A stretch of DNA of 64,000 nt, taken from assembly GCA_002269645.1 (NCBI GenBank), contig NIVC01002499.1, positions 62,001-126,000 of the forward strand, written 5' to 3'. Positions 1 through 31,140 of the stretch are shown in pieces. The notes beneath the pieces are model-generated. The model did no database searches. It was given only the letters and a program-made list of their open reading frames with translations, and was not told the origin of the DNA. This stretch comes from Macrostomum lignano. Taxonomy: Eukaryota. The number at the start of each line of letters is the position of its first letter. Position 1 is the first letter of the stretch. The translations under genes and the position numbers were made by a program.

Positions 1-61
1 GTCTGCGGGGTTCCATTGGGGTGGGCGAAGCGGTGCGATGGGACTTTGAGCAGCCGGAGGG

Positions 62-372
62 TATTTTTTATCAGAGGCAGGGGCTGTGTGCAGCCTGGCG
101 CACTCTAAGCGACATTGTCGCACACAAACGGGGAGGGGCATTGCTGCCCATTCGCCGACTCCACTGAGCAGGCACACAAGCGCGCGGATACGTACGCAGT
201 CATACGCACAGGCACACCCTCACACAGGAGTGTATTTATCATTAGGCATGTACACTTCACTGTGCCTTGAGGGTTGGCCCTAAAGGGCGTTAATTTCACG
301 AGCAGAGTGAACCTGAGATTTCCATTTAGCTTCGAATTAATAGGACTGCACTTGGAATCGAGCCTGGGCCTG
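62..372 (-). mobile_element. Dispersed repeat, copy 1; probable 3' end of a LINE/SINE family (minus strand ends CAGCCCCTGCCTCTGATAAAAAA)
   Basis: Collinear blocks shared with 46630-46852: AGAGGCAGGGGCTG, TAAGCGACATT, CTGAGCAGGCACACAA, TTAGGCATGTACACTTC, CTGCACTTGGAATCGAGCC. Both copies end in an A-rich tail on the minus strand. Confidence 0.6.
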
Positions 373-396
373 ACACATGATCATGCTAGACCACTG

Positions 397-765
397 GGCT
401 GGCGAGTATGAGCTGGTGGGTACGAACTGGCGGGTATGAGCTGGCGGGTATGAGCTGGCGGGTACGAACTGGCGGGTATGAGCTTGCGGGTATGAGCTGG
501 CGGGTATGAGCTGGCGGGTACGAACTGGCGGGTACGAACTGGCGGGTATGAGCTGGCGCGGTATGAGCTGCGGGTACGAACTGGCGGGTGAGTTGGCGGG
601 TATGAGCTGGCGGGTATGGGCTGGCAGGTATGGGCTGCAGGTATGGGCTGGCGGGTATGGGCTGTTGGGTATGGGCTGGCGGGTATGGGCTGGCGGTATG
701 GGCTGGTGGGTATGGGCTGTGGGTATGGGCTGGCGGGTATGGGCTGGCGGGTATGGGCTGGCTGG
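397..765. repeat. Minisatellite, ~14-bp unit (TATGAGCTGGCGGG grading to TATGGGCTGGCGGG), in the intron after the claudin-like exon
   Basis: Direct tandem repetition starting just past the donor at 795. Confidence 0.95.
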
Positions 766-795
766 CGCAGCTGTTAGTGGCGGGCCAGCAGCTAC

Positions 796-1129
796 CTGGC
801 ACGAAGTGCTCGCAGCTGATGTGCTGCAGCTCGTGCGGCACGGTTTTGTTAAAGGCCAGCAGAAAGCAGGCGTCCCACAGGCCGGACCAGGCGGAGCCGC
901 GGCCGCTGCCTTCGCCGCCGCCGCCGCCAGCCGGCCCGGCCGTCCAGTGGGAGGCCGGGTGCAGCATGTTGGCGTACAGGATGAGCGCCAGGACGGAGGC
1001 TCCGGCGCCGCTGCAGCGCCAGCGCAGCCGCCGCTTCTCCTGGAAGCAGAAATCTTCGGTGTAAACGCGCTGCTCGTAGGCGCTGTTGTCCGGCACCTTG
1101 AAGCTCAGGAAATTCTTCAGCGACTTCAT
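796..1129 (-). CDS. Claudin/PMP22-superfamily 5' coding exon (module B): N-terminus, TM1 and first extracellular loop; gene continues left of the window
   Basis: MKSLKNF...SVLALILYANMLHPASHW...AWSGLWDACFL...ISCEHFVP: hydrophobic helix, W, then GLWxxC claudin signature. Donor CAG|GTAGCT at 796/795, phase 1. Confidence 0.65.
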
Positions 1130-2965
1130 CCGGCGGCGGGTGCCGACTGCGCCGGCGGCCGCTCATGGCAGCGGCGGCACCGGAGGCGGCGGCAGAGGCA
1201 GCGAAAGCGTCGGCAACATCGCTGCAGGTTGACTCGCTGGATGGCGGGGGGCCTTCAGTCGCCCGGAAGTCGGTCGGAAGCTCCGGCGCGGGAAATTCGG
1301 GCGAGGGCAGCGGGTCGCGACAGAGAGAAGGGGAATCTGTGGGAAACTGGGCTCCGCCCGTCTTGACTTTTCCCTCACGAGAGCCCCGGGGGGCCTCCAC
1401 TTCGGGTTGGCCGCCCGGCTGCCAGCCACTGGGCGGCCACCCGCTGCCGCCCTCCGCAGAGATGAGGCTTCCAGCTTCCAGCTTACTCTCCGCGACTCCG
1501 CTTTCGCCTCTTCCCGCGGCGGGGGAGGGTGTGGAGGCAACGGCTCCTCCCCGCGGATCCTCGAAGTCCTGCGACACCTCAGACGGAGGAGGCTGGGGGA
1601 GGCCGTGGCATCCACGGCGAGCTCAGATCAGCTCTCGAGGCCGGCAGGGGAGAGGAATGAAGGCGGAGAGAAAGTACAGCCTGCAGGTGAGCCCGCGCCT
1701 TAATCCGCCGCCGCTGCCCCTTCCGATGCCCCAGCCCCATCTCACTCAGGCTGCCCAGCATCCCTGTCCCTCATGCCTCATCACTTCCCACTTCCCACTC
1801 ACAGCAGCGGCATTTGCCTCGGCCAGTTCTGCAAATTCCCTGCCTGGCCGGGTGTCCGGCGAGGGCGAAACAAACGGCGGCTCAACGGGCCACCGGGAGA
1901 CCAGCCGCCTCCAGCGCCTCCTCCATTGCGGCGCGCTGCCTCGCGTGCCGCGGCCCCGCCAGCAGCTGCATCTGCCCGCTGGAATTTTGGCACCGGCTCA
2001 GCTGGGGCGGGGCAGCCCGCTTTGGAAGCGACAGCCTCAGCTGAGCAGAGCGCGCCATCAATCTGATGCCCCGCCTTATAGAGCTCCCCTCTCAGTTTCA
2101 TTTTCTTTGCACTCCACTTGCCTATCCAGCCTCTCCGTTCTTCATCTCTACTCTTCGGGCGGAGAGCCTTCTGTCTCGGATTTCCCCAGTCTCCCAGAAC
2201 CCCCCCCCCAGCTCGGCGCATGAATAATTCCTGCGCGATCCCGGATGAGGCTGGTGGCGCCCTTCGCAGCCCGCCTCCCCGGAACTGGCGTCCCCGGCTG
2301 CCAGTGATTGCTCCTTCCTGTGATTCAATTCACCACTGCGGCACGAGGCCACCAGCTGCAGCAGCAGTGGTAGTGGGCGGGGATAAATGAGTTGACGGGA
2401 TGAGGCCAGCTGGCGATGCAGCCGCTGCCCCCCTCCGCCCTCCGCCCAGCCAGCGCCTGCGGGAGGCCGCCTGCCCGGCCGGCTGTTCGCGAATTCCGGG
2501 CTGGCGGAAACGCCAAGCGGTCGGCCAGAAGCAGAAGGCGGATCGAAGCGGCCGCCGGATCAAACCAGCTGAGATCCCCCTTCCTTCCCCCTGCCGGCCT
2601 GCAGCTCCGCGACGCTGGCAGGGTTTGGGCAGCGGGTCCTCACTGCTACCCCTTGCTCCTATCCTCATCGGTCTTCCCAATCCCAGTCTCGGGGTTTCCC
2701 CTCTGCTGAGTTTTCCCTGGTCCGGGTGTCTGTCTCCCTCCCCCCAACTCTCCTCCCACTTCTGTCCCCTCGCATCCGCCCACATTTCTTTCCATCGCAG
2801 TTTCTCTGCCTCATTCATTTTCCAACTTCTGCCCTCCTTGCGCTACCAACTCCGTCGAGCCGCCCGGCTGGAGGCGGGGAGCTGCTGGGCGGCTGCCACC
2901 CCTCTCGGCTGCGCGCTCGATCAAGTGATGCGGGCTGCACTTTCCCCTGCACCCCGGGTCTCATG

Positions 2966-3655
2966 GCCTGCCTGTGTCTGCCTGTGTCTGCCTGTGTCTG
3001 CCTGTGTCTGCCTGTGTCTCCCTGTGTCTGCCAGTGTTTGCCTGTGTCTGCCTGTGTCTGCTTGTTTCTGCTTGTTTCTGCCTGTGTCTGTCTGTGTCTG
3101 CCTGTGTCTGCCTGTCTTCCTGTGTCTTAGCGTTTGTCTGTATCTGCCTGTGTCTGCCTGTGTCTGCCTGTCTTAGCGTCTGCCTGTGTCTGCCTGTGTC
3201 TTAGCGTCTGTCTGTATCTGCCTGTGTCTGCCTGTGTCTGCCTGTCTTAGCGTCTGCCTGTGTCTGCCTGTCTTAGCGTCTGCCTGTGTCTGCCTGTCTT
3301 AGCGTCTGCCTGTGTCTGCCTGTCTTAGCGTCTGCCTGTGTCTGCCTGTCTTAGCGTCTGCCTGTGTCTGCCTGTCTTAGCGTCTGCCTGTGTCTGCCTG
3401 TGTCTTAGCGTTTGTCTGTATCTGCCTGTGTCTGCCTGTGTCTGCCTGTCTTAGCGTCTGCCTGTGTCTGCCTGTGTCTTAGCGTCTGTCTGTATCTGCC
3501 TGTGTCTGCCTGTGTCTGCCTGTCTTAGCGTCTGCCTGTGTCTGCCTGTCTTAGCGTCTGCCTGTGTCTGCCTGTCTTAGCGTCTGCCTGTGTCTGCCTG
3601 TCTTAGCGTCTGCCTGTGTCTGCCTGTCTTAGCGTCTGCCTGTGTCTGCCTGTCT
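2966..3655. repeat. Minisatellite, 10-bp unit TGTCTGCCTG with ~25-bp higher-order variant containing TCTTAGCG
   Basis: Direct tandem repetition. Confidence 0.95.
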
Positions 3656-4021
3656 TAATGTCCTTAGCGAATCCAGTTCACCACCGAAGGGCCGGAGGAG
3701 GCGGCACCGCAGGAAGCCGCGGAGCTGCAGTCACTCGCAGCCGGGGAATCCACTAGAAGGGAGCTCTGGCGAGGCTGGAGAACTTTTAGCTGGTGCAGAC
3801 AGGAAGGCAGGCCGGGCTGTGAGCGGGCGGCTTGGAGGCCGGCCACCCCTGCACTCGCACTGTTGAGCCGGGGGCGGCAGGGGCGGTGGCTGCGCACCAA
3901 GCAGATGGGAGAAACGGGAAGCCCAACGCCTTTCCTGACTGACTGGCGGAAGTTTTCTGCTCCTCAGACTGGCAGGGGCGGCAGCTGAGCCCTCTCGGTT
4001 TTTTTAGCGCAACCTCCTCAC

Positions 4022-6345
4022 CGTGAGCATCGATGTAGAGCGAGTGCAGCTGGAAGTTGTGCACGCACGTGCCGTTGGCCAGGAAGCAGGTGTCCCACAG
4101 GCCGGACATCACCTGGGTCGAATTCTCTGCGGGTCGGACAAAATCTATTTTCAAGCGAAAGCGTTTTCTTAAGCATAAATTTAAAATAAAATAATTTGCT
4201 CGCTACTCTACTGATGAGTAGTCGGCTGCAGAAACTTTTGTTGAATTGAGGCTTAAATGAACATTTGAACCTGGCTCTTTAGCATTCAGCTTGCTGACTG
4301 TCAGCTCTGAGAGCTTGCCGCATGACCCATCAGTTCGCCGACTGTCAGCTCTGAGAGCTTGCCGCATGACCCATCAGTTTGCTGACTGTCAGCTCTGAGA
4401 GCTTGCCGCATGACCCATCAGTTTGCTGACTGTCAGCTCTGAGAGCTTGCCGCATGACCCATCAGTTTGCCGACTGTCAGCTCTGAGAGCTTGCCGCATG
4501 ACCCATCAGTTCGCCGACTGTCAGCTCTGAGAGCTTGCCGCATGACCCATCAGTTTGCTGACTGTCAGCTCTGAGAGCTTGCCGCATGACCCATCAGTTT
4601 GCTGACTGTCAGCTCTGAGAGCTTGCCGCATGACCCATCAGTTTGCCGACTGTCAGCTCTGAGAGCTTGCCGCATGACCCATCAGTTTGCCGACTGTCAG
4701 CTCTGAGAGCTTGCCGCATGACCCATCAGTTTGCTGACTGTCAGCTCTGAGAGCTTGCCGCATGACCCATCAGTTTGCCGACTGTCAGCTCTGAGAGCTT
4801 CCCGCATGACCCATCAGTTTGCTGACTGTCAGCTCTGAGAGCTTGCCGCATGACCCATCAGTTTGCTGACTGTCAGAATGTGCAGCAGAGTCTCCCAGTG
4901 GCCTCAACAGCTGACAACTTGAGTCTCTGGCCCTGTTCGAGTTTCTGCTTCGCCTCGTTTTCGGTTTTTCGGGCGTTAAAATTTTTAACTTCTTTGAGGG
5001 GAAACAAAAATTGCTAAGTTTTCCTTGTTAGGGCCAAAATCGAGGTCAGCGAGCGTGTCAGAATACGCGGAATATTAATCCTGGGTGCACTGCCGGCTGG
5101 AGCGGAGGCTGGGACCGCCACCCCAATTAGGCGCCACTCTGAGTCTGCATCCATTTTCCCGCGAACCGCCCACTGAAATTCCTTTTTCGGTGGCGTCAGA
5201 TACAATGGCTTCGAGAGGGGGCGGGAACTGGTCCTGGCTGGGACAATTTCCCCCGAGAAATCGGTGAGGAAGGGGCGACACGAGCCGGTTGCGGTGCTGG
5301 CCTGCTGCTGGCCAGTTGAAGCGAATGGGAGGCGGTCTGGAGTTGGTGGTGGAGTAGATTGTTGAGTAGGTTGTAAAGTAGATTGAGAAGTAGATTGTGG
5401 AGTAGATTGTGGAGTAGATTGTGGAGTAGATTGTTAAGTAGGTTGTGAAGTAGATTGAGAAGTAGATTGTGGAGTAGATTGTGGAGTAGATTGTGGAGTA
5501 GATTGTGGGGTAGATTGTGGAGTAGATTGTGGAGTAGATTGTGGAGTAGATTGTGGAGTAGATTGTGGAGTAGATTGTGGAGTAGATTGTGGAGTAGATT
5601 GTGAAGTAGATTGAGAAGTAGATTGTTGAGTAGACTGTGGAATGCATTGCGGAATAGACTGTATAGTAGACTGGAAATAAGATTTGTTGAGTACAATCAG
5701 CAACCACAAGTACGAGGGAATGAGCTCAGCAGAGTGCAGAGCAGAGAACGCATTTAAATCCCTGGCGAGTCGGAGCTGCTAGTCCGCTCACCCAGCATGT
5801 AGAAGGCCCAGGACCGGCTGCTGAGGCTGGTGACGCCGGTGACAACGGCCAGCGCCAGCAGCAGCAGCGCCAGCTGGCGGGAGCGGACGAAGAACGGGTG
5901 CTGCCAGAAGGCCAACAGGCGGCTCCACTGCGCCGGCGTCAGCTCCGGCTCGTCCGGCTTGTGGTGCCGACGCTGCTTCCGCCCGCCGCGCCCGCCTCGG
6001 CCGGAATTTTTCCGCGCCGCCGGCTTTTTCTTGTGCACCGGCGGCGGCAGCGTCGGGATCGCCTCCTCATCGATCGACGCCTCGGTGTCGCAGCGCCGCC
6101 GGTCGCGCGACCACTCCAGCCAGCCGACCTCGTCGCGGAGACCCGCTGTCGGCGTCGGCTGCGGTGGAGGCGGCGGCGCGAACGGCGACCTCGGCGGCGC
6201 CGCCTCGTCGCCAGGCGTCAGGCCCGCCGCCGCCGCTGCTGCTGACGACGATGCCGCCAGCGGTGACAACGGCTGCGGCGGCAGCAGCAGGTCGAGATGC
6301 CGCGGCTGGCCGGCGCACCGACCTTGAGACTTCTGAGCGTCCAGT
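4022..6345 (-). CDS. Claudin/PMP22-superfamily 5' coding exons (module A): exon ~6345-5792 and exon 4126-4022; possible upstream exon near 6980-6720
   Basis: Exon ending ...QLALLLLALAVVTGVTSLSSRSWAFYML G|GTGAG (5792, phase 1) splices in frame to cgcag|AG AAT TCG ACC, giving ENSTQVMSGLWDTCFLANGTCVHNFQLHSLYIDAH G|GTGAG (105 nt, phase 1). GLWxxC motif and an NST sequon. Start codon not resolved. Confidence 0.7.
4293..4875. repeat. Minisatellite, 44-bp unit, ~13 copies, intronic
   Basis: Unit GCTGACTGTCAGCTCTGAGAGCTTGCCGCATGACCCATCAGTTT. Confidence 0.97.
5352..5640. repeat. Minisatellite, 12-bp unit AGTAGATTGTGG, intronic
   Basis: Direct tandem repetition; explains the spurious IYST/LLHN/STPQ ORFs. 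Confidence 0.95.
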
Positions 6346-6377
6346 GTGAAGGCTGGGATCGGCCGGGTAGTTGATTA

Positions 6378-6575
6378 TTTCAATCTGTGGGCTGTGAGCA
6401 GCTGGGGATATCAATCTGTGAGCTGTGAGCGGCTGGAGATTTCAATCTGTGAGCTGTGAGCAGCTGGGGATTTCAATCTGTGAGCTGTGAGCAGCTGGGG
6501 ATTTCAATCTGTGAGCTGTGAGCAGCTGGGGATTTCAATCTGCGAGCTGTGAGCAGCTGGGGATTTCAATCTGAA
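6378..6575. repeat. Minisatellite, 31-bp unit, ~6 copies
   Basis: Unit GAGCTGTGAGCAGCTGGGGATTTCAATCTGT. Confidence 0.93.
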
Positions 6576-7132
6576 GGGCTGGAAGCGGCTCAACAGCTGA
6601 GGATCTCAATTGCCTGACCCCCCCGGCCTGCCGCTGCATCCACCGCTGCAGCAGCAGCAGCTCAGCGCAATCAATTATTGATGGCCAGCAGGCTGCTCAG
6701 AGCGGGCCAGGTAACTCAGACGTGCAGCTGGGGGGGGGGGGCTCCTGGACCGCTGCGGGCCAGCCAGTCCTGCAGAGATAAAAGGGGGGGCAGCTGCCAC
6801 CCCAACTGCCAACTGCTGCCGCTGCTGATGCTGCTGCTGCTGCTGATCTCTCAGCCTTGGCTGAGTCATTGCCCGTTTTCCTGCGCGCAGTCCAGAGTCC
6901 AGCCCGACTGTCAGGCTGTGATGCCCTGCTGTTTCTGCAGGTGGGCTCAGCTTTCTGCTTAATGAGCTGATGAGCTCCATCTGGATTGTGGATATTGCCA
7001 GTCATTTTCCATTGGTAAAGTGGGCAGTAAGAAACATCTGCATAAAATTTGCTTCGATTCATTTGAAGCACGTATTTATACCTGACCTGGGGACAGCGAC
7101 TGATGGGTACGTCACTGCATGAGGCCTGGGGT

Positions 7133-7309
7133 TCCTGCAGGCTGTGGTGGGTCACTAAGGTTTGGGATTACTGCAGGCTGTGGTGGGTCACTGAGGTTTG
7201 GGATTCCTGCAGGCTGTGGTGGGTCACTGAGGTTTGGGATTCCTGCAGGCTGTGGTGGGTCACTGAGGTTTGGGATTCCTGCAGGCTGTGGTGGGTCACT
7301 GAGGTTTGC
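7133..7309. repeat. Minisatellite, 36-bp unit, ~5 copies
   Basis: Unit CTGCAGGCTGTGGTGGGTCACTGAGGTTTGGGATTC. Confidence 0.95.
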
Positions 7310-7708
7310 GATTATACTCATTGAGGCTAACACGAGTCAGTTTGCTTTGGAAGCAGTGCCTCGTTTATCTATCCTTCACCGCTGTTTGAGCAGCTCGCAG
7401 AATTCCCAACATGGGATCCAGCGATTCGGCGAGCAAGAGCACTAAAAGGCCCCCAATTATCTGGTGGGCTGCCTGTCGGGGCGGTCTGGCCCGAATCCAT
7501 ATCGAATCAAGACCAGCAGGCTGACCTGAGCGCTGCACCCAAGCTGACACTTAATGCTTTTTGGCACTGCCGGTCTGCGGCGAGATGAATTGTCAATTTT
7601 ATGAGTAAATGCAGATTTTCTGAGCCTCTGCAAACGCCATTGACTTTATTCGCAGTACTGCAGTGACATTGTCTGGTAGCAATAAATGGGCTAAAAATGT
7701 ATGCACCC

Positions 7709-9356
7709 GTCTGGACTGTGTCCTGAAGCTGAGCGGTGTGGACTCATCTAACACTGTCTGGACTGTGTCCTGAAGCTGAGCGGTGCAGACTCATCTAACA
7801 CTGTCTGGACTGTGTCCTGAAGCTGAGCGGTGTGGACTCATCTAACACTGTCGGGACTGTGTCCTGAAGCTGAGCGGTCTGGACTCATCTAACACTGTCG
7901 GGACTGTGTCCTGAAGCTGAGCGGTGTGGACTCATCTAACACTGTCGGGACTGTGTCCTGAAGCTGAGCGGTGTGGACTCATCTAACACTGTCGGGACTG
8001 TGTCCTGAAGCTGAGCGGTGTGGACTCATCTAACACTGTCTGGACTGTGTCCTGAAGCTGAGCGGTGTGGACTCATCTAACACTGTCGGGACTGTGTCCT
8101 GAAGCTGAGCGGTGTGGACTCATCTAACACTGTCTGGACTGTGTCCTGAAGCTGAGCGGTGTGGACTCATCTAACACTGTCTGGACTGTGTCCTGAAGCT
8201 GAGCGGTGTGGACTCATCTAACACTGTCGGGACTGTGTCCTGAAGCTGAGCGGTGTGGACTCATCTAACACTGTCGGGACTGTGTCCTGAAGCTGAGCGG
8301 TGTGGACTCATCTAACACTGTCGGGACTGTGTCCTGAAGCTGAGCGGTCTGGACTCATCTAACACTGTCGGGACTGTGTCCTGAAGCTGAGCGGTGTGGA
8401 CTCATCTAACACTGTCTGGACTGTGTCCTGAAGCTGAGCGGTGTGGACTCATCTAACACTGTCGGGACTGTGTCCTGAAGCTGAGCGGTCTGGACTCATC
8501 TAACACTGTCGGGACTGTGTCCTGAAGCTGAGCGGTGCAGACTCATCTAACACTGTCTGGACTGTGTCCTGAAGCTGAGCGGTGTGGACTCATCTAACAC
8601 TGTCGGGACTGTGTCCTGAAGCTGAGCGGTGCAGACTTATCTAACACTGTCTGGACTGTGTCCTGAAGCTGAGCGGTGCAGACTCATCTAACACTGTCGG
8701 GACTGTGTCCTGAAGCTGAGCGGTGTGGACTCATCTAACACTGTCGGGACTGTGTCCTGAAGCTGAGCGGTGTGGACTCATCTAACACTGTCGGGACTGT
8801 GTCCTGAAGCTGAGCGGTGCAGACTCATCTAACACTGTCGGGACTGTGTCCTGAAGCTGAGCGGTGTGGACTCATCTAACACTGTCGGGACTGTGTCCTG
8901 AAGCTGAGCGGTGTGGACTCATCTAACACTGTCGGGACTGTGTCCTGAAGCTGAGCGGTGTGGACTCATCTAACACTGTCTGGACTGTGTCCTGAAGCTG
9001 AGCGGTGTGGACTCATCTAACACTGTCTGGACTGTGTCCTGAAGCTGAGCGGTGTGGACTCATCTAACACTGTCTGGACTGTGTCCTGAAGCTGAGCGGT
9101 GTGGACTCATCTAACACTGTCTGGACTGTGTCCTGAAGCTGAGCGGTGTGGACTCATCTAACACTGTCTGGACTGTGTCCTGAAGCGTGCGGACTCATCT
9201 AACACTGTCGGGACTGTGTCCTGAAGCGTGCGGACTCATCTAACACTGTCGGGACTGTGTCCTGAAGCGTGCGGACTCATCTAACACTGTCGGGACTGTG
9301 TCCTGAAGCTGAGCGGTGCGGACTCATCTAACACTGTCGGGACTGTGTCCTGAAGC
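7709..9356. repeat. Minisatellite, 47-bp unit, ~35 copies
   Basis: Unit CTGGACTGTGTCCTGAAGCTGAGCGGTGTGGACTCATCTAACACTGT; internally deleted units near 9180-9290. Confidence 0.97.
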
Positions 9357-10174
9357 AGACGTTTCACAAGGGACCTTACCTTGTTAAAACGGTTGCAAAA
9401 GCGCAGAATTTACTGCTTATCTGGAAGCCAAGCAAAAGCAGTTATTTGCAATAGCCGTCGGTTCAGTCTCCAGTAGATCATCGCCAGCCAGCCACTGCAC
9501 TGGCTGATATGCACTTGATTCGCTGCAGGGCCACTTGGCAAATGGCGGAGCAGCACCCGCAACTCTGCATGCGCCGCGGTTGGCTCATCACGCTTGGCTT
9601 TTGTTGTTACAAAGGCTCAACTGTTTTTAACCGTTTTGATGTGCTAAGCCTCTTTATTTGACTTCTCCCATGTTTGCTACTGAGTAGCGTGCACTGTGTG
9701 TGGCTGATATTATCGAACAGAGAAAATTTAAATTGGTCAAAAGCGACTTTCAAAGCAGAGTTGTTTTAAAACTTCACAGCGGTTTGCGAGTCCAATCGAA
9801 CAACAAAGTCGCACGCCGTTCAAGGTTAATTCGGCGGCTTTCATATGCTTTGATAAAGTCCGTTCCTTTGAATAAATAGCCATCTAGCCCCCCCCCGCTG
9901 GCTGAGTCTTGAAGGCGGGGCACAAAGCCAGCACGCAGCTGGAGCCCGCATCTTTCCATCCATGGCTGTTGAGTCGGGCCTAAAGGTTCTATGCTTGGGC
10001 TAATGAGCATCGAATTTTGGTGCCACATGCCATGACGTACTCCGACTCAAAGCAATGGGGGACGGTGACGGCAGGGAGACGCCATAGCGACGGAAGCAAC
10101 GAATATTGGCCTTCAAGCAAAATCAGTTTTGCAACTGTCATTCCTTTTAATCTATATTACAAAATCTGAAATAT

Positions 10175-10180
10175 TTTATT
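10175..10180 (-). terminator. Polyadenylation signal AATAAA of the vWA gene
   Basis: TTTATT on the plus strand ~120 nt past the stop at 10300. Confidence 0.5.
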
Positions 10181-10299
10181 CATTTTTATCAGGAATGCTT
10201 ACGGTTTCATGCGATCGATATACAAATATGTCGAAATATCAACTCAAAGCCATAAAAAAGTTCACGACTATCACGAAGCGGCAGGAGTCGCTCGCGCGC

Positions 10300-11742
10300 T
10301 CAGCCCCGCAGGCTCCTCTCCGACACGGACACGAAGACGCCGCCGCACCTCGCCGAGCGGCCGCTGTTCCACGCGTAGCTCGCCGCCTTGGCCAGCCGGG
10401 GCCGCGGGCTCGCGGGAGCAGCGCCGGCCACCCTGGCGAACACCCGCATGCCCTGGCGCAGCACCCGCTCCAGTTGGGCCCGGACAGCCGGCCGGCCAGC
10501 CAGGAGGCTCTTCACGCTGACCACCGGCAGGCCGCGGCGTCGGCTGCTGTCGGCCGAGAGGACGCGGCCGAACAGCGGGAAGCGCCGGGCGCCGGGCCGC
10601 GGCTGCACGGCGAGCTCCACGACTTGCTGGCCGCCACCGCCGCCGCGGCTGAACAGCGACTTGCGCACCGAGCCGCTTCCAAAGCGTTGCCATGACAACC
10701 GGGACACGCTTCCGGGCTGACCGACCAAGCGCCAGGGAGACCAGGTGAGAGCGGCCAGCCCAGCGGGCAGGTGCCTGTTGGAGCAGGTCTCCCGGCGAGT
10801 TCGGACCGCCCTGGCAGCCCGCGCCCGCGAAATTCTCGCAGCTGCCATGACGGGCTTCGTGACGGGCTTCGTGACGGGCTTCGTGACGGGCTTCGTGACG
10901 GGCTTCGTGACGGGCTTCTTCGCCTTTCCTGAAGTTCCGGCGGTCACCGCTTTGGCAGTCTTTGTTCGCCTCGCCGCAGTCTTTGTCCCAGTGGCTGCCC
11001 CGGACGGGTCGGCGGCGACGCTGCTGGCCGCCAGGGTGGCCGCCGACGATCGGCGCACGAGGCCCAGCATGGCGCTCACGTCGCCGGCCAGCGCGGCGCC
11101 GTCCCTGGCGCGCACCTCGCGCTCGTAGCCGTCGCGAAGGACGTCGTTGCCGCCCTCCCGGTAGGCGATGGCCATGAGGAAGTCGCGAACGCCCCGGAAC
11201 TCAGCCAGGGGGAGCCGCAGGCCGCCGGTCACCTTGGCGACGTGGTCCATGAAGCTCTGCGAGTTCTTGCTGCTGCCGCACTGCACGCAGTACACGGTGA
11301 CTCCCAGCTGGTGCAGCAACTCGGTCTCCGCCTTCCAGTCGATCTTGTACTTGTTCCTGGCGCTGCCCACCTCGTGCGGGAAGGCGTCGCCAACCAGCAC
11401 CAGAGCGCGGCTGCTGTGCGGGCGCCAGCTGAGGCGGGTGCGGGCCTGCTGCAGCACCAGCTCGTAGCACTCGGGCTCGTCCCTGCCGTGCGTGCCCTGC
11501 ACAGTCTTGGCGAACCGCACCAGGTCCGCTGTGGAGGTGCCGAAGTCGCGGATCTCCGTCTCGTACCTGTCCCCGTAGTCTCCGTGAGCGATGAGAGCCA
11601 CGCTCAGGTCCGGGATGTCGGTGGCGAGCCGCTGCAGCATCTCGGCGATGTTGCCGCGCACCTCGTTGATGACGGAGCCCATTGAGCCGGTCGTGTCGAA
11701 AGAGAAGGCCAAGTCCAGCGGCTGAGCTCCAGGGAGTGCCAT
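10300..11742 (-). CDS. Intronless 480-aa vWA-domain protein with a Lys/Thr-rich (PVTK)n linker and a C-terminal ET/GIY-YIG-like domain
   Basis: N-terminal LDLAFSFDTTGSM (MIDAS-type), LIAHGDY, EPECYE, LVLVGDAFPH: vWA type seen in vwkA-like proteins. C-terminal WSPW...VVELAV...SYAWN. GC-rich coding bias. Confidence 0.88.
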   Translation of the reverse strand: MALPGAQPLDLAFSFDTTGSMGSVINEVRGNIAEMLQRLATDIPDLSVALIAHGDYGDRYETEIRDFGTSTADLVRFAKTVQGTHGRDEPECYELVLQQARTRLSWRPHSSRALVLVGDAFPHEVGSARNKYKIDWKAETELLHQLGVTVYCVQCGSSKNSQSFMDHVAKVTGGLRLPLAEFRGVRDFLMAIAYREGGNDVLRDGYEREVRARDGAALAGDVSAMLGLVRRSSAATLAASSVAADPSGAATGTKTAARRTKTAKAVTAGTSGKAKKPVTKPVTKPVTKPVTKPVTKPVMAAARISRARAARAVRTRRETCSNRHLPAGLAALTWSPWRLVGQPGSVSRLSWQRFGSGSVRKSLFSRGGGGGQQVVELAVQPRPGARRFPLFGRVLSADSSRRRGLPVVSVKSLLAGRPAVRAQLERVLRQGMRVFARVAGAAPASPRPRLAKAASYAWNSGRSARCGGVFVSVSERSLRG

Positions 11743-11833
11743 GTCTTTATTTAGAAAGCGTTCGGTTCAGAGTCAGAAGCTTGGCAAGGTTTTGCTCTGT
11801 GTCTGAGCAGCTGGCCGGAGTCCGGAGGCTCCG

Positions 11834-11841
11834 CTTATATA
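11834..11841 (-). promoter_or_regulatory. TATA box of the vWA gene
   Basis: TATATAAG on the minus strand ~95 nt upstream of the ATG at 11742. Confidence 0.55.
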
Positions 11842-12431
11842 GACTTTTGCTGCGCGGGCGCCGCGTGTGGCGACACGCCGACTCAGTTTCTCTGCCTTCC
11901 TCCCTGATTGAACTCAACCCGTCCCGAAGCTAAAAATAGAAAAGCGGTGAGCTCCGCTGCCAGAGGTAGGGTTGGGGGCTGTACTCTGCTGCAGGTCTTT
12001 TCTCTGTAAAGAGAAAGCGCAGGCAAGCCAAAATCTTGCTGCGTGTGGCCACATGCGGATGATTTTAAGCATCAGAAATAAGTTAATTAAAAAAGAAACC
12101 GATCAAGTACTCGTACATGTATACGTTGATTAAAACAAAAGCTGAACAAACGTTTAGCTTGAAGCGACTTGAGAAGCTGCGGCACACTGCATGTTTATTT
12201 CTGGCCGCTTCAAAAGATAAGAAACAGCGAGGGCAGTTTTTTTACAAAATTTTGAAAACTCTCTGCTACATGTAATGTACATGCAGTTGTGTTTAGAGCT
12301 GGGTTATGATCACTAAATCTATCTAGCTGCATTTATGAACGAATAAGAGTTATTTATAAATAGCTTCAACCTCTATTACTTGTAGTTAGTACTGGTAGTA
12401 CAGAGCGTCCTTTTACTTCAGCTGTTCATGG

Positions 12432-13029
12432 TCAGCATTCCAAGGAGGCCAGCTCGGCCTCCGCCTTCGGCTTCTCTTCTTCTTTTCGTTGCTTCTGCTT
12501 CTTGCAGAGGTAGCAGCAGCAGGCGGTGATGAGGACGCTGCAGCCGGCACAGCAGGTGCAGAAGGCGATGGAGAAGTTGAGCACCAGCAGGGCGATGCGC
12601 ATGAGCAGGGTGAACCTGGCGAACAAGAACATGGGCTTGTAGCAGTAGCTGCCTGCGCTGGCGGGGATGGCGGTTGCGTTGCCAACGGGCGGCACCGAGG
12701 GCAACTCCGGCAGGGTGAACACCGGGTCGGTGCCGAAGACCCAGACGCAGCCGCAGATGAACCAGATGACGACGAACAGGTCCAGCAGCAGCAGCAGGCA
12801 TCCGCAGCAGGTGACTTCGTTCTTCCCGCCGGCTCCGGTTCGTCAGCAGGCTGGCCAGGTTGCTCACGGTCAGGACGATGCCAGTGCAGCCGGCCACCAC
12901 CAGGTAGACGGGCACCTTCGGCTGGGCCGGACAGTCGTACAGGTACATGGAGCCGACGACGATCTCGGCGACGCTGAGGCCCACGTCAGCCAGGATCAGG
13001 CAGAAGATGACAAAATTTCTGCAGCTCAT
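12432..13029 (-). CDS. TMEM272-like 4-TM protein, intronless, with an apparent 1-nt frameshift near 12830 (sequence error or pseudogene)
   Basis: Frame 1: VGSMYLYDCPAQPKVPVYLVVAG. After the shift: NEVTCCGCLLLLLDLFVVIWFICGCVWVFG...YCYKPMFLFA...ACCCYLCKK...SLEC*. Both halves carry TMEM272-family motifs. Confidence 0.8.
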
Positions 13030-16000
13030 GGCGGCGGCGGGAGGCGGGCACGTGGGGCTGCTTCACACTTGCAGCCAGGGCGCCCTAGCTGCTGACTTTT
13101 ATTTGGCATTTAGCAACCAGAGTGCGTATAAAGGCAGGGTCCATATGAAGGCAAGGTGCGTAATATAAAGGCAAGGTGCGTATAACAGGGTGCGAAACAG
13201 GCTGCTTTTTTCCAGAATTCAAACGGGGATATTTGTGTGCACTGTTTGATCCCGCGCTTGGCTTCGTTAAATGGAGCCTGGAACCTTCAACTGCCGCACC
13301 CTCATGGCCTGGCGCTGGGTGCGCTCTGGCAGCGTGCAGGGGACTCTTGAGCTGCGTTGGTTTGACTCTGGCTACTGTGAGCTGTTGTTTGACTCAAGGA
13401 TAGCGGTAACTTCCGGATAGTGGTCCTTGTCTCTATTCCTTCCGCCAAACTGTATAATATACATACATTGATCGATTTTGTAGCATAATAAAAGCTTTTG
13501 AATTACACCTACACATTTTATTTGATTAGCTGGGCTAAGCTGAGATGGGCAAGAATGATTTCAGTGATGTTAAGTTGTAACAGATTATTCTTTATACTTG
13601 CATGTCTACTGTGTAAGTGTAATATTCGAATGTGCAAGTATAATGTTAGCGAGTGAATGCTGCAATTACCCAAACATTTAAATTTCGTTTGCGGGATTTT
13701 TGGTGTTTAAACGTAACGTTTAACTTTAAATTATATACAAGTGGCAAACTATGCTGTCTACGCTACTATAACAACTAAATGGTTAAAAAGAATGTAAGAC
13801 GTAAGACTTCAAGTTCCATGCACAGACACGAAGTTCCACAAAACAACTTCCGGCTTCTTAATTTTAAAATCATTATAACTATTCTTCATTTCTACTAGCT
13901 ATTAAAAACGTACATACACTAATTAAAATTAATTACCCTTAAAAAATTAGGTAAAGATATCATTTGCTATATGATTTTGCGCGTTTTGCGGAAGGTAACA
14001 TACAGTTTTACTGCTCTTCTTTCGCCGAAATAGCTTTCGCTGATGTTGTCGTCTTTTCTATGAACGTCAGCCAGCCATCATCCATGAGCTCCATTTCATC
14101 CATGACCATGATATGCCATCTATGATATCACGAACCAGAGCCGTATATGTAATTCTAATATAAAAAACATTTTTGTTTAATAAGTAGATTCCCCCATATC
14201 CCAGACCCCAGCAGCCTAGTCAGTGTCAACAAACTAAACACTAGCGCGACTAGCTCCATTTTAGCGCCGCAATATTTTGAATGAAAGTGCCAAATTATTT
14301 ATTTAAAAATGCAAGAAATATTTTTGTATTCATTTACTATCAGTTTACTTATCAAATCACTTTAAAACCATAAAAAATCAATATATAAATATTCTTATCA
14401 AAGTTATAATATTGCAATAGGCTAATTTTTTGTCTTTAGTTTTTTATGTTTATTTATTTGTTAGATAAGAATGATAGGGCCTGCCCTATCAGAAAAGTCT
14501 TCATTTTGCATCGGGCATCCAGTGCACCTAAGAAAATTTAGCAAGAATAGCTATAGGCAGATGTGCACATGTGCTGGTGCACATTTAGCCAGAGCCTCAA
14601 GGGCCATTGCTTCCATCCCACTTGGCCCCCCACAATGCGGGCACAAGCAGAGCCAAGAAAGAGACAAGTCAGCCGCATCTTCAAAACCTATAGGAAATAA
14701 GTACATATGCATGTATATGCATATACATATGCTATAGCTAGGAAAGTGACAGTTTTTGGTGAACTTTCTGGCGCAAATTGGCCCTTTTTGGTACACATGG
14801 CGCACATGGGATACAAGGAAAAATTGGAAATGCTCTGGCGGTGCACATGGCGCATGGCGCTGAAAAAATATATAGTTAGGCCCCCTACACTTCGTTATAC
14901 TTTGCAAAATATATAGTGTCAGGCCTAATTCCATAATTCATAAAATAAAATGTTATATTATCAGAGTACTAAAATTATGTAAATCACAATATAAAATACA
15001 TAAAATGAAATTCAAATTTGTCTACCATAAATTCAAATTTGTTTACCAGTGAATTATTAATTACCTTACCTTACCTTATCATGGCGCGTTGCGGTGCACA
15101 AAATATTTTCTTCACGGCGCACGGCGCACAGTGCTCAAAAGCCATCAAAATAGTTCCGGTGTACACTGTGCCACCTTCCCGACTATAGTACACATGCACA
15201 CTTAGCCTATAAGCAAATGGCATCAAATGTGTCAACAATTTATCTAGAAATGTAGGCCTAGGTTTAACTTAGGTCTAGTTAAACTATATTATACTTTATT
15301 TGAACTTGCATATTAACCATGAAAAATTTTAAGGCAAAGAAAATTGAACAAAGTGTTACAAAGAGCTCATATACACATATTGTAATTGAAAAAATTCAAA
15401 CAATTAATGAAGAAAAAAGTTGATAATATAATTTTAAGATGCTATTTGCTAACTAGATCAGAGATTCTAATATACACAGTATATAACATTTGGTCAATTA
15501 TAGTTTGTTCCACTATAGCCATAGCTATGGCTATGTGATCCTATAGCAAATATGGTAAAATAGATGCCTCTGGCAGTTACAAATATGCCTATGGTAGCTA
15601 GTTGCTCTTATGGCTATGACTACGGAAATATGGTAGTTGCTGTCACATTTCATAGATTCTTGTAGCTATAGTTGTTAATTTAAAAAAATTGAAAAAAATA
15701 TTAGAAACAGGTAGAGTAAAACAAAGATACTTTAGTAAACTGTATTATCAAAGTAGAAACTTATAGAATATACCTAATAAAGTACAATAAAACACTAGCA
15801 AATTCTAATTTTTATCAATGTGAAAAAAGTTTAGCATTAGTACTTTTAGTAACAATTAAGCATTGTTGCTTTATAAAAAGATGAAATATAATCTTACAAA
15901 GGCAATCAAGTGTTTCTTATATTTTCTAACTTAATTTGCAGTTGTTTAAGCACCAGGTTATCCTCTTGATTTAAAATATTTTGTTTTCTAGACTTTTTGT

Positions 16001-19403: not shown

Positions 19404-20189
19404 GGGCCATTCCATATAATTATGGTTGTAACATAACAGACTATTTTTACTTACAAAATGAAATCTAATAATAGAATATACTAAACCTATATTTTGAATG
19501 AAAGATTATTTTGTCAGGAATATGTTTGTAAAGTTTCATATAGATATCATCATTAGTATAGATGCTATTAAACCTTGAATGGCACTTATGGTTGTAACAA
19601 TAGGATTTTTGACATATAGAAACTAAAAGGTAAAAGTCTTATAACATTTTTCATTTTTGATATTTTGCAAAAAAATTTTTTAAATTTGACTAAGAACATC
19701 TTTAGAAGTCATACTCTTTTATTAGAATATATAAACTCAAAAAGGCAACAAAGATACAAAAGAAAAGGCAGCCTTATGGTTGTAATTTTATGGTTGTAAC
19801 ATATTTTTTTCTGTCAATTCAGTAACTTTGAAGTACTAATATATTAAAAATATAATAGATTATATGGTTGCTAATGATTTTATCTGATGATGCAAGTACT
19901 ATAATTTTATATATAGTTTGTTTTAACCTTCAAAAGCTTTCTATTTGTTTTTAAAAGGTACATAAACTTAATGATGTCTTTCGCTTAGAAAATGTCCAAT
20001 TTTTGACAAAAATAACTTTTTGCCAATTGATAACATACTAATCCAACATTTTATCATTTATTTATTATTAGATTGTATACATTATATACAAAAAAGATTT
20101 GGTAAAAAAATGGCTGATAAGGCAATGACAAACAAAAATATTGACTTTTTTCTATTTTCCAAATATGTCTATCTTATATGGAATGGGCC
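19404..20189. mobile_element. ~790-bp non-autonomous DNA transposon with ~16-bp TIRs
   Basis: Left GGGCCATTCCATATAA and right TTATATGGAATGGGCC (1 mismatch); internal TATGGTTGTAA motif four times; no ORF; TSD unclear. Confidence 0.65.
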
Positions 20190-21227
20190 ATAGAATAAGA
20201 AAAGACAAGTTAGAAAATCTTAAAATGTACACTAGTGCCTTTGTTAAATATCTGGCTATTGAGGATAGGTTTAAGCTCTTTTATATACAATGCTTATAAA
20301 GTTAGTACTGTTGTCAATAATACTAAATTGGTCAATATGCTTGCATTGGGTATATTAGTTGCATATAAGAAGGTGATCATATACAGTAGACACTTTTGAA
20401 ATGCTCCTTTACTCTTATGTATAGGTGTCATTCTGTTTATCAATGTAAAACTGGCTCTGCTTAGCAACACACAAAAATTTGTAAATGACACTAGCACACT
20501 GTGGCATAAAAATAGTACATTTGAGGATTTAAGTAAATTGACCAACTTTCATAGTAGAAAAGTTTATGTTAATGTCAGTTTGCTAGTTTTATAGATAGCA
20601 TTTTGAAGTTTTTGTTTAAATTTAATGTGGATGGCTTCCCAAATAAATAGCAGAGTAAAATTGATTGTACTTTGTTTGGTTTTAAGCTAAACTTTTGGTT
20701 GATGAAGTTGTAGACCTTGGTTTTAAAAAACTTTTTAGGGTATTTAAAAAACAATTACCCAATATATATTATATCTTAGGGAATAGAATTATATCTATTA
20801 TTGCTCAATAGATATAATAGATAGATATAATAGAATTATATCTATTCCCTATTGGAGCAATAGATTTTTTATATGGATTACATCCTGCATAGATAAAGAA
20901 ATCAATTGGTGTACCTGCATGCTTAAACATGTTTAAAATCCTAAATTTCAAACTAATTCATAAGGCTTCTTAAAAGCCTGAAAGAATTCACTATACCTTA
21001 GTCGATAGATAGTTAAGATTAGAAAGGTGAGAGGACATGAGTACAGAACAATTTTTTTGCTATTTATTGACCCTATTGTTGTATACTTGTAACATGTAAC
21101 ATTACTTGTATCATTAAAGCACTATTTTTGTATTAGTGCCACCTTCTAATGCGACACTTGGCTGGCTATATCTCTAATGTAAGATTTATGTATGAATTCA
21201 TATATGGTAGTCTCTGCAATTCATTGC

Positions 21228-26789: not shown

Positions 26790-27245
26790 TTTCCCAGATC
26801 TCCCAGCAACTGGCACCTGAGGTTCAGCTCCCAGATCTCCCAGCAACTGGCACCTGAGATTTAGCTCCCAGATCCCCCAGCAACTGGCACCTGAGATTCA
26901 GCTCCCAGATCCCCCAGCAACTGGCACCTGAGATTCAGCTCCCAGATCTCCCAGCAACTGGAACCTGAGATTCAGCTCCCAGATCCCCCAGCACCTGAGA
27001 TTCAGCTCCCAGATCTCCCAGCAACTGGCACCTGAGATTCAGCTCCCAGATCCTTAGCAACTGGCACCTGAGATTCAGCTCCCAGATCCCCCAGCACCTG
27101 AAATTCAACTCCCAGATCCCCCAGCACCTGAGATTCAGCTCCCAGATCCCCCAGCACCTGAGATTCAGCTCCCAGATCTCCCAGCAACTGGCACCTGAGA
27201 TTCAGCTCCCAGATCTCCCAGCAACTGGCACATGAGATTCAGCTC
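26790..27245. repeat. Minisatellite, 37/27-bp units, immediately upstream of the SUFU main exon
   Basis: Unit GAGATTCAGCTCCCAGATCTCCCAGCAACTGGCACCT with internal deletions. Confidence 0.95.
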
Positions 27246-30630: not shown

Positions 30631-31140
30631 ATGTCCAGCCCTGCAGCCGTGACCGCTGGCGCAGCGGAGAAGTCCATGAAGGTGGTGCTGCTGGCGGTAG
30701 ACAGCTCGCCGCACTGCAAGCGCGCATTCGACATGTACCTGAAGCAGGTGCGCCAGCCCACGGACGTCCTGCTGCTTGTCCACGCCGTGGAGCCGCCCAG
30801 CCAGCCGGTGGCGCTGAGCGTCAGCGACAACTTCTTGAAGCGGCACACGGAGCTGATGGAGGAGCAGCTGGCGGAGGCTGAGCGGCTCAAGCAGCGCTGG
30901 AAGGACGCCTGCCACCAGCTGGGCATCAAGAAGTTCTCCTTCGTGAATGTGTCCGGCGAGCCTGGCGAGGCCATCGTGCAGGCGGCCGAGGAGCACGAGG
31001 CGGACCTGGTGGTGATGGGCAGCCGCGGCCTCGGCACCCTGCGGCGCACCTTCCTGGGCTCCGTGAGCGACTACGTGCTGCACCACGCCTACAGGCCGGT
31101 GCTCATCTGCCCGCCGTCCAAGCGGGAGGCCACTGAGTAG
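30631..31140 (+). CDS. Universal stress protein (UspA family), 169 aa, single coding exon
   Basis: KVVLLAVDSS, LLLVH, GEPGEAIVQAAEE...ADLVVMGSRGLG...FLGSVSDYVLHHA..PVLICP (G-2x-G-9x-GS ATP motif). Kozak context GCCGCCATG. Confidence 0.95.
   Translation: MSSPAAVTAGAAEKSMKVVLLAVDSSPHCKRAFDMYLKQVRQPTDVLLLVHAVEPPSQPVALSVSDNFLKRHTELMEEQLAEAERLKQRWKDACHQLGIKKFSFVNVSGEPGEAIVQAAEEHEADLVVMGSRGLGTLRRTFLGSVSDYVLHHAYRPVLICPPSKREATE

What the first reader, a model, noticed from the sequence alone, without database searches (positions are those of the whole stretch)
796..6345. Two alternative claudin TM1+ECL1 modules that may share one downstream set of exons (variable-first-exon locus)
Seen: two paralogous segments (23/24 nt identical across GLWD[A/T]CF) lie in tandem on the minus strand. 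Both end in a phase-1 donor at the homologous point after the first-loop cysteines (4022 and 796). I found no TM2-4 exons between 4022 and 1129. Inference: both may splice to common exons left of the window, like UGT1A or protocadherin variable exons, swapping only the adhesive/selectivity loop and N-terminal tail of a junction protein.
Basis: partly seen in the sequence, partly recalled or inferred. Interest (0 to 1): 0.72.

Follow-up and report, generated by a model that had tools for sequence, protein, structure and literature searches.

The report
Two claudin-like 5' modules, flatworm gene
In a flatworm (Macrostomum lignano) contig, two diverged copies of the first-helix-plus-first-loop part of a claudin-family membrane protein lie in tandem with no other exons between them, so they may be alternative front ends of one gene as in human claudin-10 and -18, but the shared exons lie outside the window and the joint was not shown.

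Summary
On the minus strand, module A (1129..796) and module B (B1 ≤6374..5792 plus B2 4126..4022) share a 25/27-nt island encoding SGLWD[A/T]CFL. Both end in phase-1 GT donors, and both carry the extreme GC3 (~0.9) of this genome's exons.

The window is Macrostomum lignano contig NIVC01002499.1, record positions 62001-126000.

A UniProt model (A0A1I8GV57) joins module A at exactly 796 to 131 residues (TM2-4 plus tail) that are encoded nowhere in the window. The product passes Pfam PMP22_Claudin (43 bits, cut-off 26.7). The claudin-superfamily call and A's donor are therefore supported.

No TM2-4 exon for B exists between 4021 and 1130, by hydropathy or by tblastn. No AATAAA or ATTAAA lies on that strand from 6400 to 1. 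A B-type paralogue from another locus (A0A1I8F356) shows that B-type modules are conserved coding sequence.

Whether B splices to A's downstream exons could not be tested, because the left flank was unreachable. B1 has no in-frame ATG, so it needs an upstream exon or the AUG that ends the M. lignano spliced leader.

The closest precedent is CLDN10a/b and CLDN18.1/18.2, not UGT1A or protocadherin. Verdict: plausible but unproven, and of modest novelty.

The parts
796..1129 (-). Module A coding exon. ATG at 1129..1127; N-tail, TM1 (CSGAGASVLALILYANML) and ECL1 with W-GLW-C-C (SAWSGLWDAC...ISC) and an NKT glycosylation site. Last base G796, phase 1.
   Evidence: In-frame stop 12 codons upstream of the ATG. 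GC3 0.90 and codon log-odds 0.70 only in this frame, starting right at the ATG. Identical to residues 97-207 of UniProt A0A1I8GV57.
794..795 (-). Donor GT of module A (CCAG|GTAGCT), a weak match to the M. lignano GT[G/A]AG consensus.
   Evidence: The junction VP|D(WQK...) is used in A0A1I8GV57, and the Pfam PMP22_Claudin alignment runs across it. Donor consensus is from PMC8629364.
1130..1451 (-). Leader of module A as used in the UniProt model, with a 34-nt GT..AG gap at 1180..1147 that removes an out-of-frame ATG. It has no coding signature and is probably 5'UTR. The mini-intron may be a modelling artefact.
   Evidence: Window 1451..1181 plus 1146..796 translates exactly to residues 1-207 of P0121. 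No coding-like segment between 1162 and 4002.
1..793 (-). Start of the intron after module A. It contains a 14-bp minisatellite (398..762) and no exon, and it runs off the window.
4022..4126 (-). Module B exon 2 (105 nt), encoding (E)NSTQVMSGLWDTCFLANGTCVHNFQLHSLYIDAH. Acceptor CCCGCAG|, donor CACG|GTGAGG, phase 1 in and phase 1 out.
   Evidence: GC3 0.91 and log-odds 0.82 in this frame only, and the coding signature stops at the donor. 57% identical to A0A1I8F356 residues 212-241.
5792..6374 (-). Module B exon 1, shown as the maximal open frame: long Ala/Pro/Arg-rich N-tail plus TM1 (LALLLLALAVVTGVTSL) and SRSWAFYML. Donor CTGG|GTGAGC, phase 1. No in-frame ATG, so the true 5' end is unknown. 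Phase-0 AG sites lie at 6332, 6272 and 6158.
   Evidence: It is the only strongly hydrophobic minus-strand segment in 1..7000. Colinear with the N-tail and TM1 of paralogue A0A1I8F356, 58% identity over 73 residues across the B1/B2 junction.
4127..5791 (-). Intron between B1 and B2, holding 12-bp (5338..5670) and 44-bp (4286..4876) minisatellites.
1452..4021 (-). Spacer between B2's donor and A's leader. It has no exon-like segment, no TM-like frame and no AATAAA/ATTAAA. It holds a 10/26-bp minisatellite at 2968..3657.
860..886 (-). Conserved island in A (SGLWDACFL).
4080..4106 (-). Conserved island in B (SGLWDTCFL), 25/27 identical to the island in A.

Best explanation
This is the 5' end of a Macrostomum lignano gene for a four-helix PMP22/EMP/MP20/claudin-superfamily membrane protein.

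Shown:
- Module A is a first coding exon with its own ATG.
- In a deposited gene model, A splices from 796 to exons for TM2-4 that lie outside the window.
- Module B (two exons) is an old, still coding-like paralogue of the same TM1+ECL1 part, about 2.9 kb upstream on the same strand.
- B ends in a donor of the same phase as A, and nothing is available for it to splice to before A.

Inferred:
- Transcripts that start at B skip A's exon and join the same TM2-4 exons.
- This would give two isoforms that differ in cytoplasmic N-tail, TM1 and most of the first extracellular loop, as CLDN10a/b and CLDN18.1/18.2 do.
- B's initiator Met would come from an unseen upstream exon, or from the AUG at the 3' end of the M. 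lignano spliced leader trans-spliced onto a phase-0 acceptor in B1.
For: - Window identity. Positions 300..12000 are 100% identical to NIVC01002499.1 of GCA_002269645.1.
- Both modules look like coding sequence. Their GC3 is 0.89-0.91 and their codon log-odds are positive only in the proposed frames, matching confident exons of the window (GC3 0.91). They are the only such non-repeat segments on this strand between 1 and 10,000.
- A's splice. A0A1I8GV57 equals window 1451..1181 plus 1146..796, followed by 131 residues absent from the window.
- Family. Pfam PMP22_Claudin scores 43.3 bits against a cut-off of 26.7.
- B fits the domain. A hypothetical B plus the same C-part scores 48.0 bits with HMM positions 7-154; the C-part alone scores 30.4.
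- No private exons for B. There is no TM-like or homologous exon between B2 and A, and no canonical poly(A) hexamer on the strand from 6400 to 1.
- Conservation. The paralogue A0A1I8F356 keeps the B-type N-tail, TM1, exon junction and ECL1 at 58% identity. Its TM4 plus tail is 54% identical to the C-terminus of the A-type protein, although A and B modules align over only 21 residues. That pattern fits a C-part that belongs to B-type as much as to A-type products.
- Start codon. The M. lignano SL ends in ATG and about 30% of genes are trans-spliced (PMC8629364).
Against: - No junction from 4022 to any exon was seen, and the shared acceptor lies outside the window.
- No protein carrying this window's module B was found in the collections searched. 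The Mlig_3_7 NCBI annotation calls no gene at all between window 300 and 10300.
- B1 has no ATG, and none of its phase-0 AG sites matches the [T/C]TNCAG trans-splice motif.
- The C-terminal similarity argument is confounded by unequal rates along the protein, and the middle of A0A1I8F356 looks mis-modelled.
- If the 34-nt mini-intron acceptor at 1147 is real, B2's donor could also join A's exon in frame, which a clean variable-first-exon locus should not allow.
Confidence: 0.55

Rival explanations
1. Module B is a relic of a partial tandem duplication of the gene's 5' end, or of a tandem paralogue that lost its TM2-4 exons. It may be transcribed little or not at all, and it makes no functional isoform. 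Only the A-type protein is real.
For: - B1 has no in-frame ATG.
- No protein with this window's B module was found in the public collections searched.
- No gene is annotated here in the Mlig_3_7 NCBI annotation.
- M. lignano is a recent polyploid with many redundant copies (PMC10468722).
Against: - Both B exons keep open frames, consensus GTGAG donors, a CAG acceptor and GC3 of about 0.9-1.0.
- The SGLWDxCFL motif and the glycosylation site are kept while the rest has diverged beyond alignment from A. This implies constraint on both lineages for most of their history.
- A B-type paralogue at another locus is 58% identical and also lacks an N-terminal Met in its model.
- The A-type protein is equally missing from the NCBI annotation, so absence there says little.
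Confidence: 0.25
2. B and A are two separate genes. B's own TM2-4 exons lie further left, inside A's first intron or beyond A's gene (interleaved or nested genes), or they were lost from the contig by mis-assembly of this repeat-dense region.
For: - The B-type paralogue A0A1I8F356 has a C-terminus of its own (54% identical, not identical, to the A-type), so full B-type genes exist.
- The contig is packed with minisatellites.
Against: - An interleaved arrangement would require A's exon to splice across B's exons, or the reverse, which is less parsimonious than sharing.
- The paralogue is at another locus, so its private C-terminus says nothing about this one.
- There is no sign of an assembly break between 4021 and 1.
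Confidence: 0.12
3. B2 splices in frame to the acceptor at 1147 just upstream of A's ATG, giving one long protein with two TM1+ECL1 modules in series.
For: B2's donor is phase 1, and the acceptor used in the UniProt model (1147|1146) accepts phase 1. The read-through ...IDAH-VGTRRR-MKSLK... is open.
Against: - The product would have five helices, with A's loop (glycosylation site, cysteines) and all later parts in inverted topology.
- The 34-nt intron has a poor donor (GTGCCG) and no pyrimidine tract. It looks like a device of the gene predictor to keep an ORF open through a leader with no coding signature.
Confidence: 0.05

Closest known systems
CLDN18 (exons 1a/1b giving claudin-18.1 and 18.2) and CLDN10 (claudin-10a/10b)
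   Same: A claudin-family gene with two alternative first exons joined to common downstream exons. The claudin-10a and -10b variants form paracellular pores of opposite charge selectivity (PMC9153115, PMC9184838). From general knowledge, not checked in the passages read here, the alternative exons encode the N-terminus, TM1 and most of ECL1. The layout in the window matches: two paralogous modules, same strand, same donor phase, nothing between.
   Different: Here the sharing is inferred, not shown. The modules are far more diverged from each other: only a 21-residue alignment, against 92% overall identity for CLDN18.1/18.2 as stated in PMC9153115. Module B is itself split by an intron and has a roughly 160-residue N-tail and no ATG of its own. 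The organism is a flatworm, and the protein is a superfamily member, not a classical tight-junction claudin.
PMP22/EMP/MP20/claudin superfamily (Pfam PF00822; also TARP/Claudin_2 PF13903 and LHFPL PF10242)
   Same: Four helices and a GLWxxC signature just after TM1, with a second loop cysteine and an N-glycosylation site. PF00822 is passed by the A-type product.
   Different: There are no significant sequence hits to any solved claudin, TARP or other structure. Claudin_2 and LHFPL score below their cut-offs. The Cys-Cys spacing is 17 residues in A and 6 in B. From memory, classical claudins have about 8-10. The C-terminus ends QPV, not the usual claudin YV.
UGT1A / clustered protocadherin variable-exon loci
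   Same: Tandem paralogous 5' exons, each ending in a donor that would be cis-spliced to constant exons, with the downstream variable exon skipped.
   Different: Only two modules are visible. One is two exons and lacks a start codon. Own promoters and the lack of acceptors on the variable exons are untested.
Flatworm spliced-leader AUG as initiator
   Same: The M. lignano SL ends in ...TTGCATG and about 30% of its genes are trans-spliced (PMC8629364). An SL-donated AUG would explain an open, conserved B1 frame with no ATG.
   Different: No SL read was available. The phase-0 AG sites in B1 do not fit the enriched [T/C]TNCAG motif. Use of the SL AUG as initiator in other flatworms is recalled from memory, not checked here.

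Membership tests
PMP22/EMP/MP20/claudin superfamily (PF00822) | Whole product scores above Pfam's gathering cut-off | tested here: met
   A-type product (Met-start, 242 aa) scores 43.3 bits, E 4.7e-11, against a cut-off of 26.7. A0A1I8GV57 scores 42.1 bits. The isolated modules give no hit, as expected for a third of a domain.
PMP22/EMP/MP20/claudin superfamily (PF00822) | Four transmembrane helices with cytoplasmic N- and C-termini | tested here: met
   For the A-type product, TM1 is in the window. TM2-4 (AIIGLLFFSVLFAAIGSVLAVCGL, EIFFVSAVATTIAVGVYPYVV, LGWVTAGLLYLASLSMML) come from the UniProt model. The AF2 model has low confidence but shows the helices. For the B-type product this cannot be tested, because its downstream exons are not known.
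PMP22/EMP/MP20/claudin superfamily (PF00822) | ECL1 signature W...GLWxxC...C after TM1 | tested here: met
   Read directly from the sequence. A has HW...SAWSGLWDAC(x17)C and B has SRSW...SGLWDTC(x6)C. In context, the modules add 13 and 18 bits to the PF00822 score.
Classical tight-junction claudins | Close sequence relation to claudins, ECL1 Cys spacing of about 8-10, C-terminal PDZ-binding YV | tested here: not met
   No claudin among PDB sequence hits at E <= 10. Spacings are 17 and 6. The C-terminus is ...DHPQPV. It is therefore not filed as a classical claudin.
Variable/alternative-first-exon locus (CLDN10/CLDN18 type) | Two or more paralogous 5' modules in tandem on one strand, each ending in a donor of the same phase | tested here: met
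Variable/alternative-first-exon locus (CLDN10/CLDN18 type) | No private downstream exons between the modules | tested here: met
   Hydropathy scan, codon scan and tblastn.
Variable/alternative-first-exon locus (CLDN10/CLDN18 type) | Both donors join the same acceptor of the constant exons | not testable with these tools
   The constant exons lie left of the window (record NIVC01002499.1 before 62001). No transcript data were available, and no look-up reached that stretch.
Variable/alternative-first-exon locus (CLDN10/CLDN18 type) | Each module has its own transcription start and start codon | tested here: inconclusive
   A has an ATG with an upstream in-frame stop. B1's 583-nt open frame has no ATG. 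An upstream exon or an SL-donated AUG is possible (PMC8629364), but neither was seen.

The most novel reading that the evidence does not exclude
A flatworm claudin-superfamily locus uses cis-alternative TM1+ECL1 cassettes. These would be an ancient pair, conserved in at least one paralogous locus, that swaps the extracellular loop, the first helix and a long cytoplasmic tail on a constant TM2-4 body. The upstream cassette would take its initiator AUG from the trans-spliced leader. That would place the CLDN10/CLDN18 type of isoform switch in the claudin superfamily well outside vertebrates, either by convergence or as an old trait.
Probability: 0.4. Interest if true: 0.45.

Novelty: new member of a known kind. 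Interest (0 to 1): 0.3.

Why it matters
If both modules feed one set of TM2-4 exons, a flatworm would change the adhesive or selectivity loop and the cytoplasmic tail of a junction-type tetraspan protein by choice of first exon. Vertebrates use this device in claudin-10 and claudin-18, where it changes pore charge selectivity and tissue specificity. That would make the isoform switch testable in a transgenic, RNAi-amenable invertebrate.

On the practical side, this locus is missing from the current NCBI annotation of Mlig_3_7, and module B was found in none of the protein collections searched. The finding therefore marks an annotation gap. Otherwise this is an ordinary gene family member with an ordinary kind of gene structure.

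Tried and rejected
- Pfam on the isolated modules gave no hits. This is uninformative, because each module is only about a third of the domain.
- Word-indexed searches of the 5.8-billion-protein collection with B and with A found nothing. The third search went to the neighbouring VWA gene and identified the organism and contig.
- PDB sequence searches with A, B and the full A-type protein gave only chance hits.
- Rfam and tRNA scans of the window were empty.
- The homeologous locus L002 (NIVC01000195.1) has retrotransposon ORFs filling the 10 kb downstream of the VWA gene, and the modules are out of reach.
- Paralogous VWA loci L003 and L004 are not syntenic and carry no GLWDxCF motif.
- Exact-product look-ups for A0A1I8GV57 and for long ORFs near the left end found nothing, so the left flank stayed out of reach.
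- AlphaFold2 on A0A1I8GV57 without an alignment gave pLDDT 44, too poor for a fold search.
- The other hits of the profile search (P0122-P0124) are repeat proteins matching the FNxT/GLW-like stretch and are judged spurious.
- Gene conversion as the cause of the 25/27-nt island was rejected: codon bias plus conserved residues suffice.
- A coding function for the + strand ORFs across 506..2223 was rejected, as they carry no codon signal.
Full report
**What is in the sequence**

Read on the minus strand, the region holds three exon-like pieces.

- Module A (1129..796) starts at an ATG that has an in-frame stop 12 codons upstream. It encodes a 40-residue tail, a hydrophobic helix and a loop containing SAWSGLWDAC...NKT...ISC. 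It ends CCAG|GTAGCT in phase 1.
- Module B is two exons. B1 is an open frame 6374..5792 ending CTGG|GTGAGC. B2 is 4126..4022, entered after CCCGCAG and left at CACG|GTGAGG. Spliced together they read ...SRSWAFYML-ENSTQVMSGLWDTCFLANGTCVHNFQLHSLYIDAH, again ending in phase 1.
- The two modules share a 27-nt island with 2 mismatches. It is unique in the 64 kb and never arises in shuffles. At protein level only 21 residues align.

The correction is that B is split by a 1.7-kb intron and that B1 has no in-frame ATG other than the one three codons before its donor.

**Are these real exons?**

Confident exons elsewhere in the window have GC at codon positions 1/2/3 of 0.68/0.46/0.91. These are a nicotinic-receptor subunit, SUFU, a TPP enzyme, a universal stress protein and a VWA protein.

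A codon log-odds table trained on them gives positive scores only in the proposed frames:
- A scores 0.70 with GC3 0.90.
- B2 scores 0.82 with GC3 0.91.
- The last ~110 codons of B1 score 0.4-1.1 with GC3 0.93-1.0.

A sliding scan of both strands over 1..13,500 flags, on the minus strand below 10,000, only A, B2, B1 and two minisatellite artefacts. In A the signal begins at the ATG. In B2 it stops at the donor.

**Where the window comes from**

The neighbouring single-exon VWA gene (11742..10300) is 96% identical to a Macrostomum lignano protein. The locus that encodes that protein is 100% identical to window 300..12000. The window is therefore NIVC01002499.1 (GCA_002269645.1, Mlig_3_7), record positions 62001..126000, and 62 kb of the contig lie to its left. 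The NCBI annotation calls no gene between window 300 and 10300.

**What the protein is**

The isolated modules hit nothing in Pfam, in the PDB or in the word-indexed protein collection. An exhaustive HMMER search with an alignment of the two modules found two M. lignano UniProt entries.

- A0A1I8GV57 (338 aa). Residues 1-207 are exactly window 1451..1181 plus 1146..796. Residues 208-338 (DWQKAIIGLLFF... through three further hydrophobic helices and a Cys-rich tail) match nothing in the window. From the Met, this product passes Pfam PMP22_Claudin at 43.3 bits against a cut-off of 26.7, with the alignment running across the 796 junction.
- It is not a classical claudin. No claudin, TARP or other solved relative is detectable by sequence. 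The loop cysteine spacings are 17 and 6, and the C-terminus is QPV.
- As a compatibility check only, B1+B2 joined to the same 131 residues scores 48.0 bits with the model covered from position 7. The 131 residues alone score 30.4. Both modules therefore read as the missing N-terminal part of this domain.

**The B-type paralogue**

A0A1I8F356 (348 aa) comes from another locus.
- It is colinear with B1's long tail (LAA.S.SS.AAG, WL.WSR.RR, AI..LPPP, QWSRLLAFWQHP).
- It is 58% identical to B over 73 residues spanning the B1/B2 junction.
- It ends in a TM4 plus LVRESSRP tail that is 54% identical to the C-terminus of the A-type protein.
- Its middle is rich in AT-type residues and lacks TM2 and TM3, so it looks mis-modelled.
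- Its model also starts without a Met.

Two inferences follow. First, B-type modules are conserved coding sequence, not noise. Second, the A-type C-terminus is about as close to a B-type protein's C-terminus as B is to its own paralogue, although A and B modules barely align. That is what a shared C-part would predict. The argument is weak, because different parts of the protein may evolve at different rates.

**Does B share A's downstream exons?**

The exons lie left of position 1, and no tool could fetch that stretch.

In favour:
- B2's coding signal ends at a consensus donor that must join something.
- Nothing exon-like, TM-like or homologous to TM2-4 lies between 4021 and 1130 or in 795..1.
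- The donors have the same phase.
- No AATAAA or ATTAAA occurs on this strand from 6400 to 1.

Against, or open:
- No protein carrying this window's module B was found in the collections searched.
- B1 lacks a start codon.
- The UniProt model's 34-nt mini-intron would place a phase-1 acceptor at 1147 that B2 could also use in frame. That mini-intron has a poor donor and crosses a leader with no coding signal, so it is probably an artefact.

**B's missing start codon**

The M. lignano spliced leader is CGGTCTCTTACTGCGAAGACTCAATTTATTGCATG, and about 30% of genes receive it (PMC8629364). A trans-splice onto a phase-0 AG in B1 (candidates before 6332, 6272 and 6158) would supply an in-frame AUG. 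None of these sites fits the enriched [T/C]TNCAG motif, so this remains a hypothesis. An upstream ATG exon between 6375 and 10300 is the alternative.

**Comparison with what is known**

Alternative first exons are already known inside the claudin family.
- CLDN18 exons 1a/1b give the lung and stomach forms (PMC9153115).
- Claudin-10a and -10b form anion- and cation-selective pores (PMC9184838).

That is a closer match than UGT1A or protocadherin clusters. Only two modules are visible here.

**Verdict**

| Reading | Probability |
|---|---|
| Alternative 5' modules on shared exons | about 0.55 |
| B is a decaying or unused relic | about 0.25 |
| B has private exons further left, or the contig is mis-assembled | about 0.12 |
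| B and A joined in series | about 0.05 |

The finding is real, and the family call is right at superfamily level. If true, the proposed mechanism is a new member of a known kind, in a flatworm and at an unannotated locus. Interest is modest.

Noticed in passing
window 1147..1180 (minus strand): UniProt model A0A1I8GV57 removes a 34-nt GT..AG stretch from module A's leader. The stretch holds an out-of-frame ATG, and its removal opens the frame upstream. It is either a very short real intron or a gene-predictor device. Its acceptor would accept B2's phase-1 donor in frame.
   Followed up: partly
window 10300..11742 (minus strand); L001, L002: A single-exon VWA-domain gene sits 4 kb upstream of module B. 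The annotated protein (463 aa) differs from the plain ORF (480 aa), and the homeologue's ORF is longer (527 aa), with copy-number change in a KPVT repeat. Its next-closest relatives outside Macrostomum are annelid and mollusc proteins, followed by many unnamed or bacterial metagenome proteins.
   Followed up: partly
whole window, e.g. 398-762, 2968-3657, 4286-4876, 5338-5670, 7709-9356, 24296-25915, 31978-34565: Introns and intergenic DNA hold dozens of minisatellite arrays (units 7-47 bp, up to 129 copies), while exons have GC3 of about 0.91. This contrast makes exons easy to find by composition. It also creates many long spurious ORFs in repeats and GC-rich spacers.
   Followed up: partly
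window 35858..37232 (minus strand): Exons of a nicotinic-type Cys-loop receptor subunit with the vicinal YPCC of alpha subunits. A 21-bp minisatellite (36473..36683) lies inside the ORF between the transmembrane region and the cytoplasmic loop.
   Followed up: no
window 21192..24305 (+), 27232..28911 (+), 30670..31140 (+), 12418..13056 (-): Other genes in the window: a TPP enzyme (ILVBL/HACL1-like) in at least 3 exons, SUFU in about 2 large exons, a universal stress protein domain, and a small multi-pass membrane protein with no Pfam hit. The membrane protein at 12418..13056 lies inside the 21-kb stretch returned for L001, where only the VWA gene is listed.
   Followed up: partly
L002 11783..13314 and 19625..21373: In the homeologous contig, the 10 kb downstream of the VWA gene carries reverse-transcriptase-like and integrase-like ORFs. 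These are retrotransposon insertions absent from the window's copy, so the two copies differ structurally just upstream of where the claudin-like modules should be.
   Followed up: no
P0124 (278 aa, source not looked up): The profile search also pulled a protein made of repeats of ...SRIWDGCFIKHLNSTKTLANGM.... This resembles the GLWDxCF-NxT stretch but has no flanking helices. It was judged a chance or low-complexity match.
   Followed up: no
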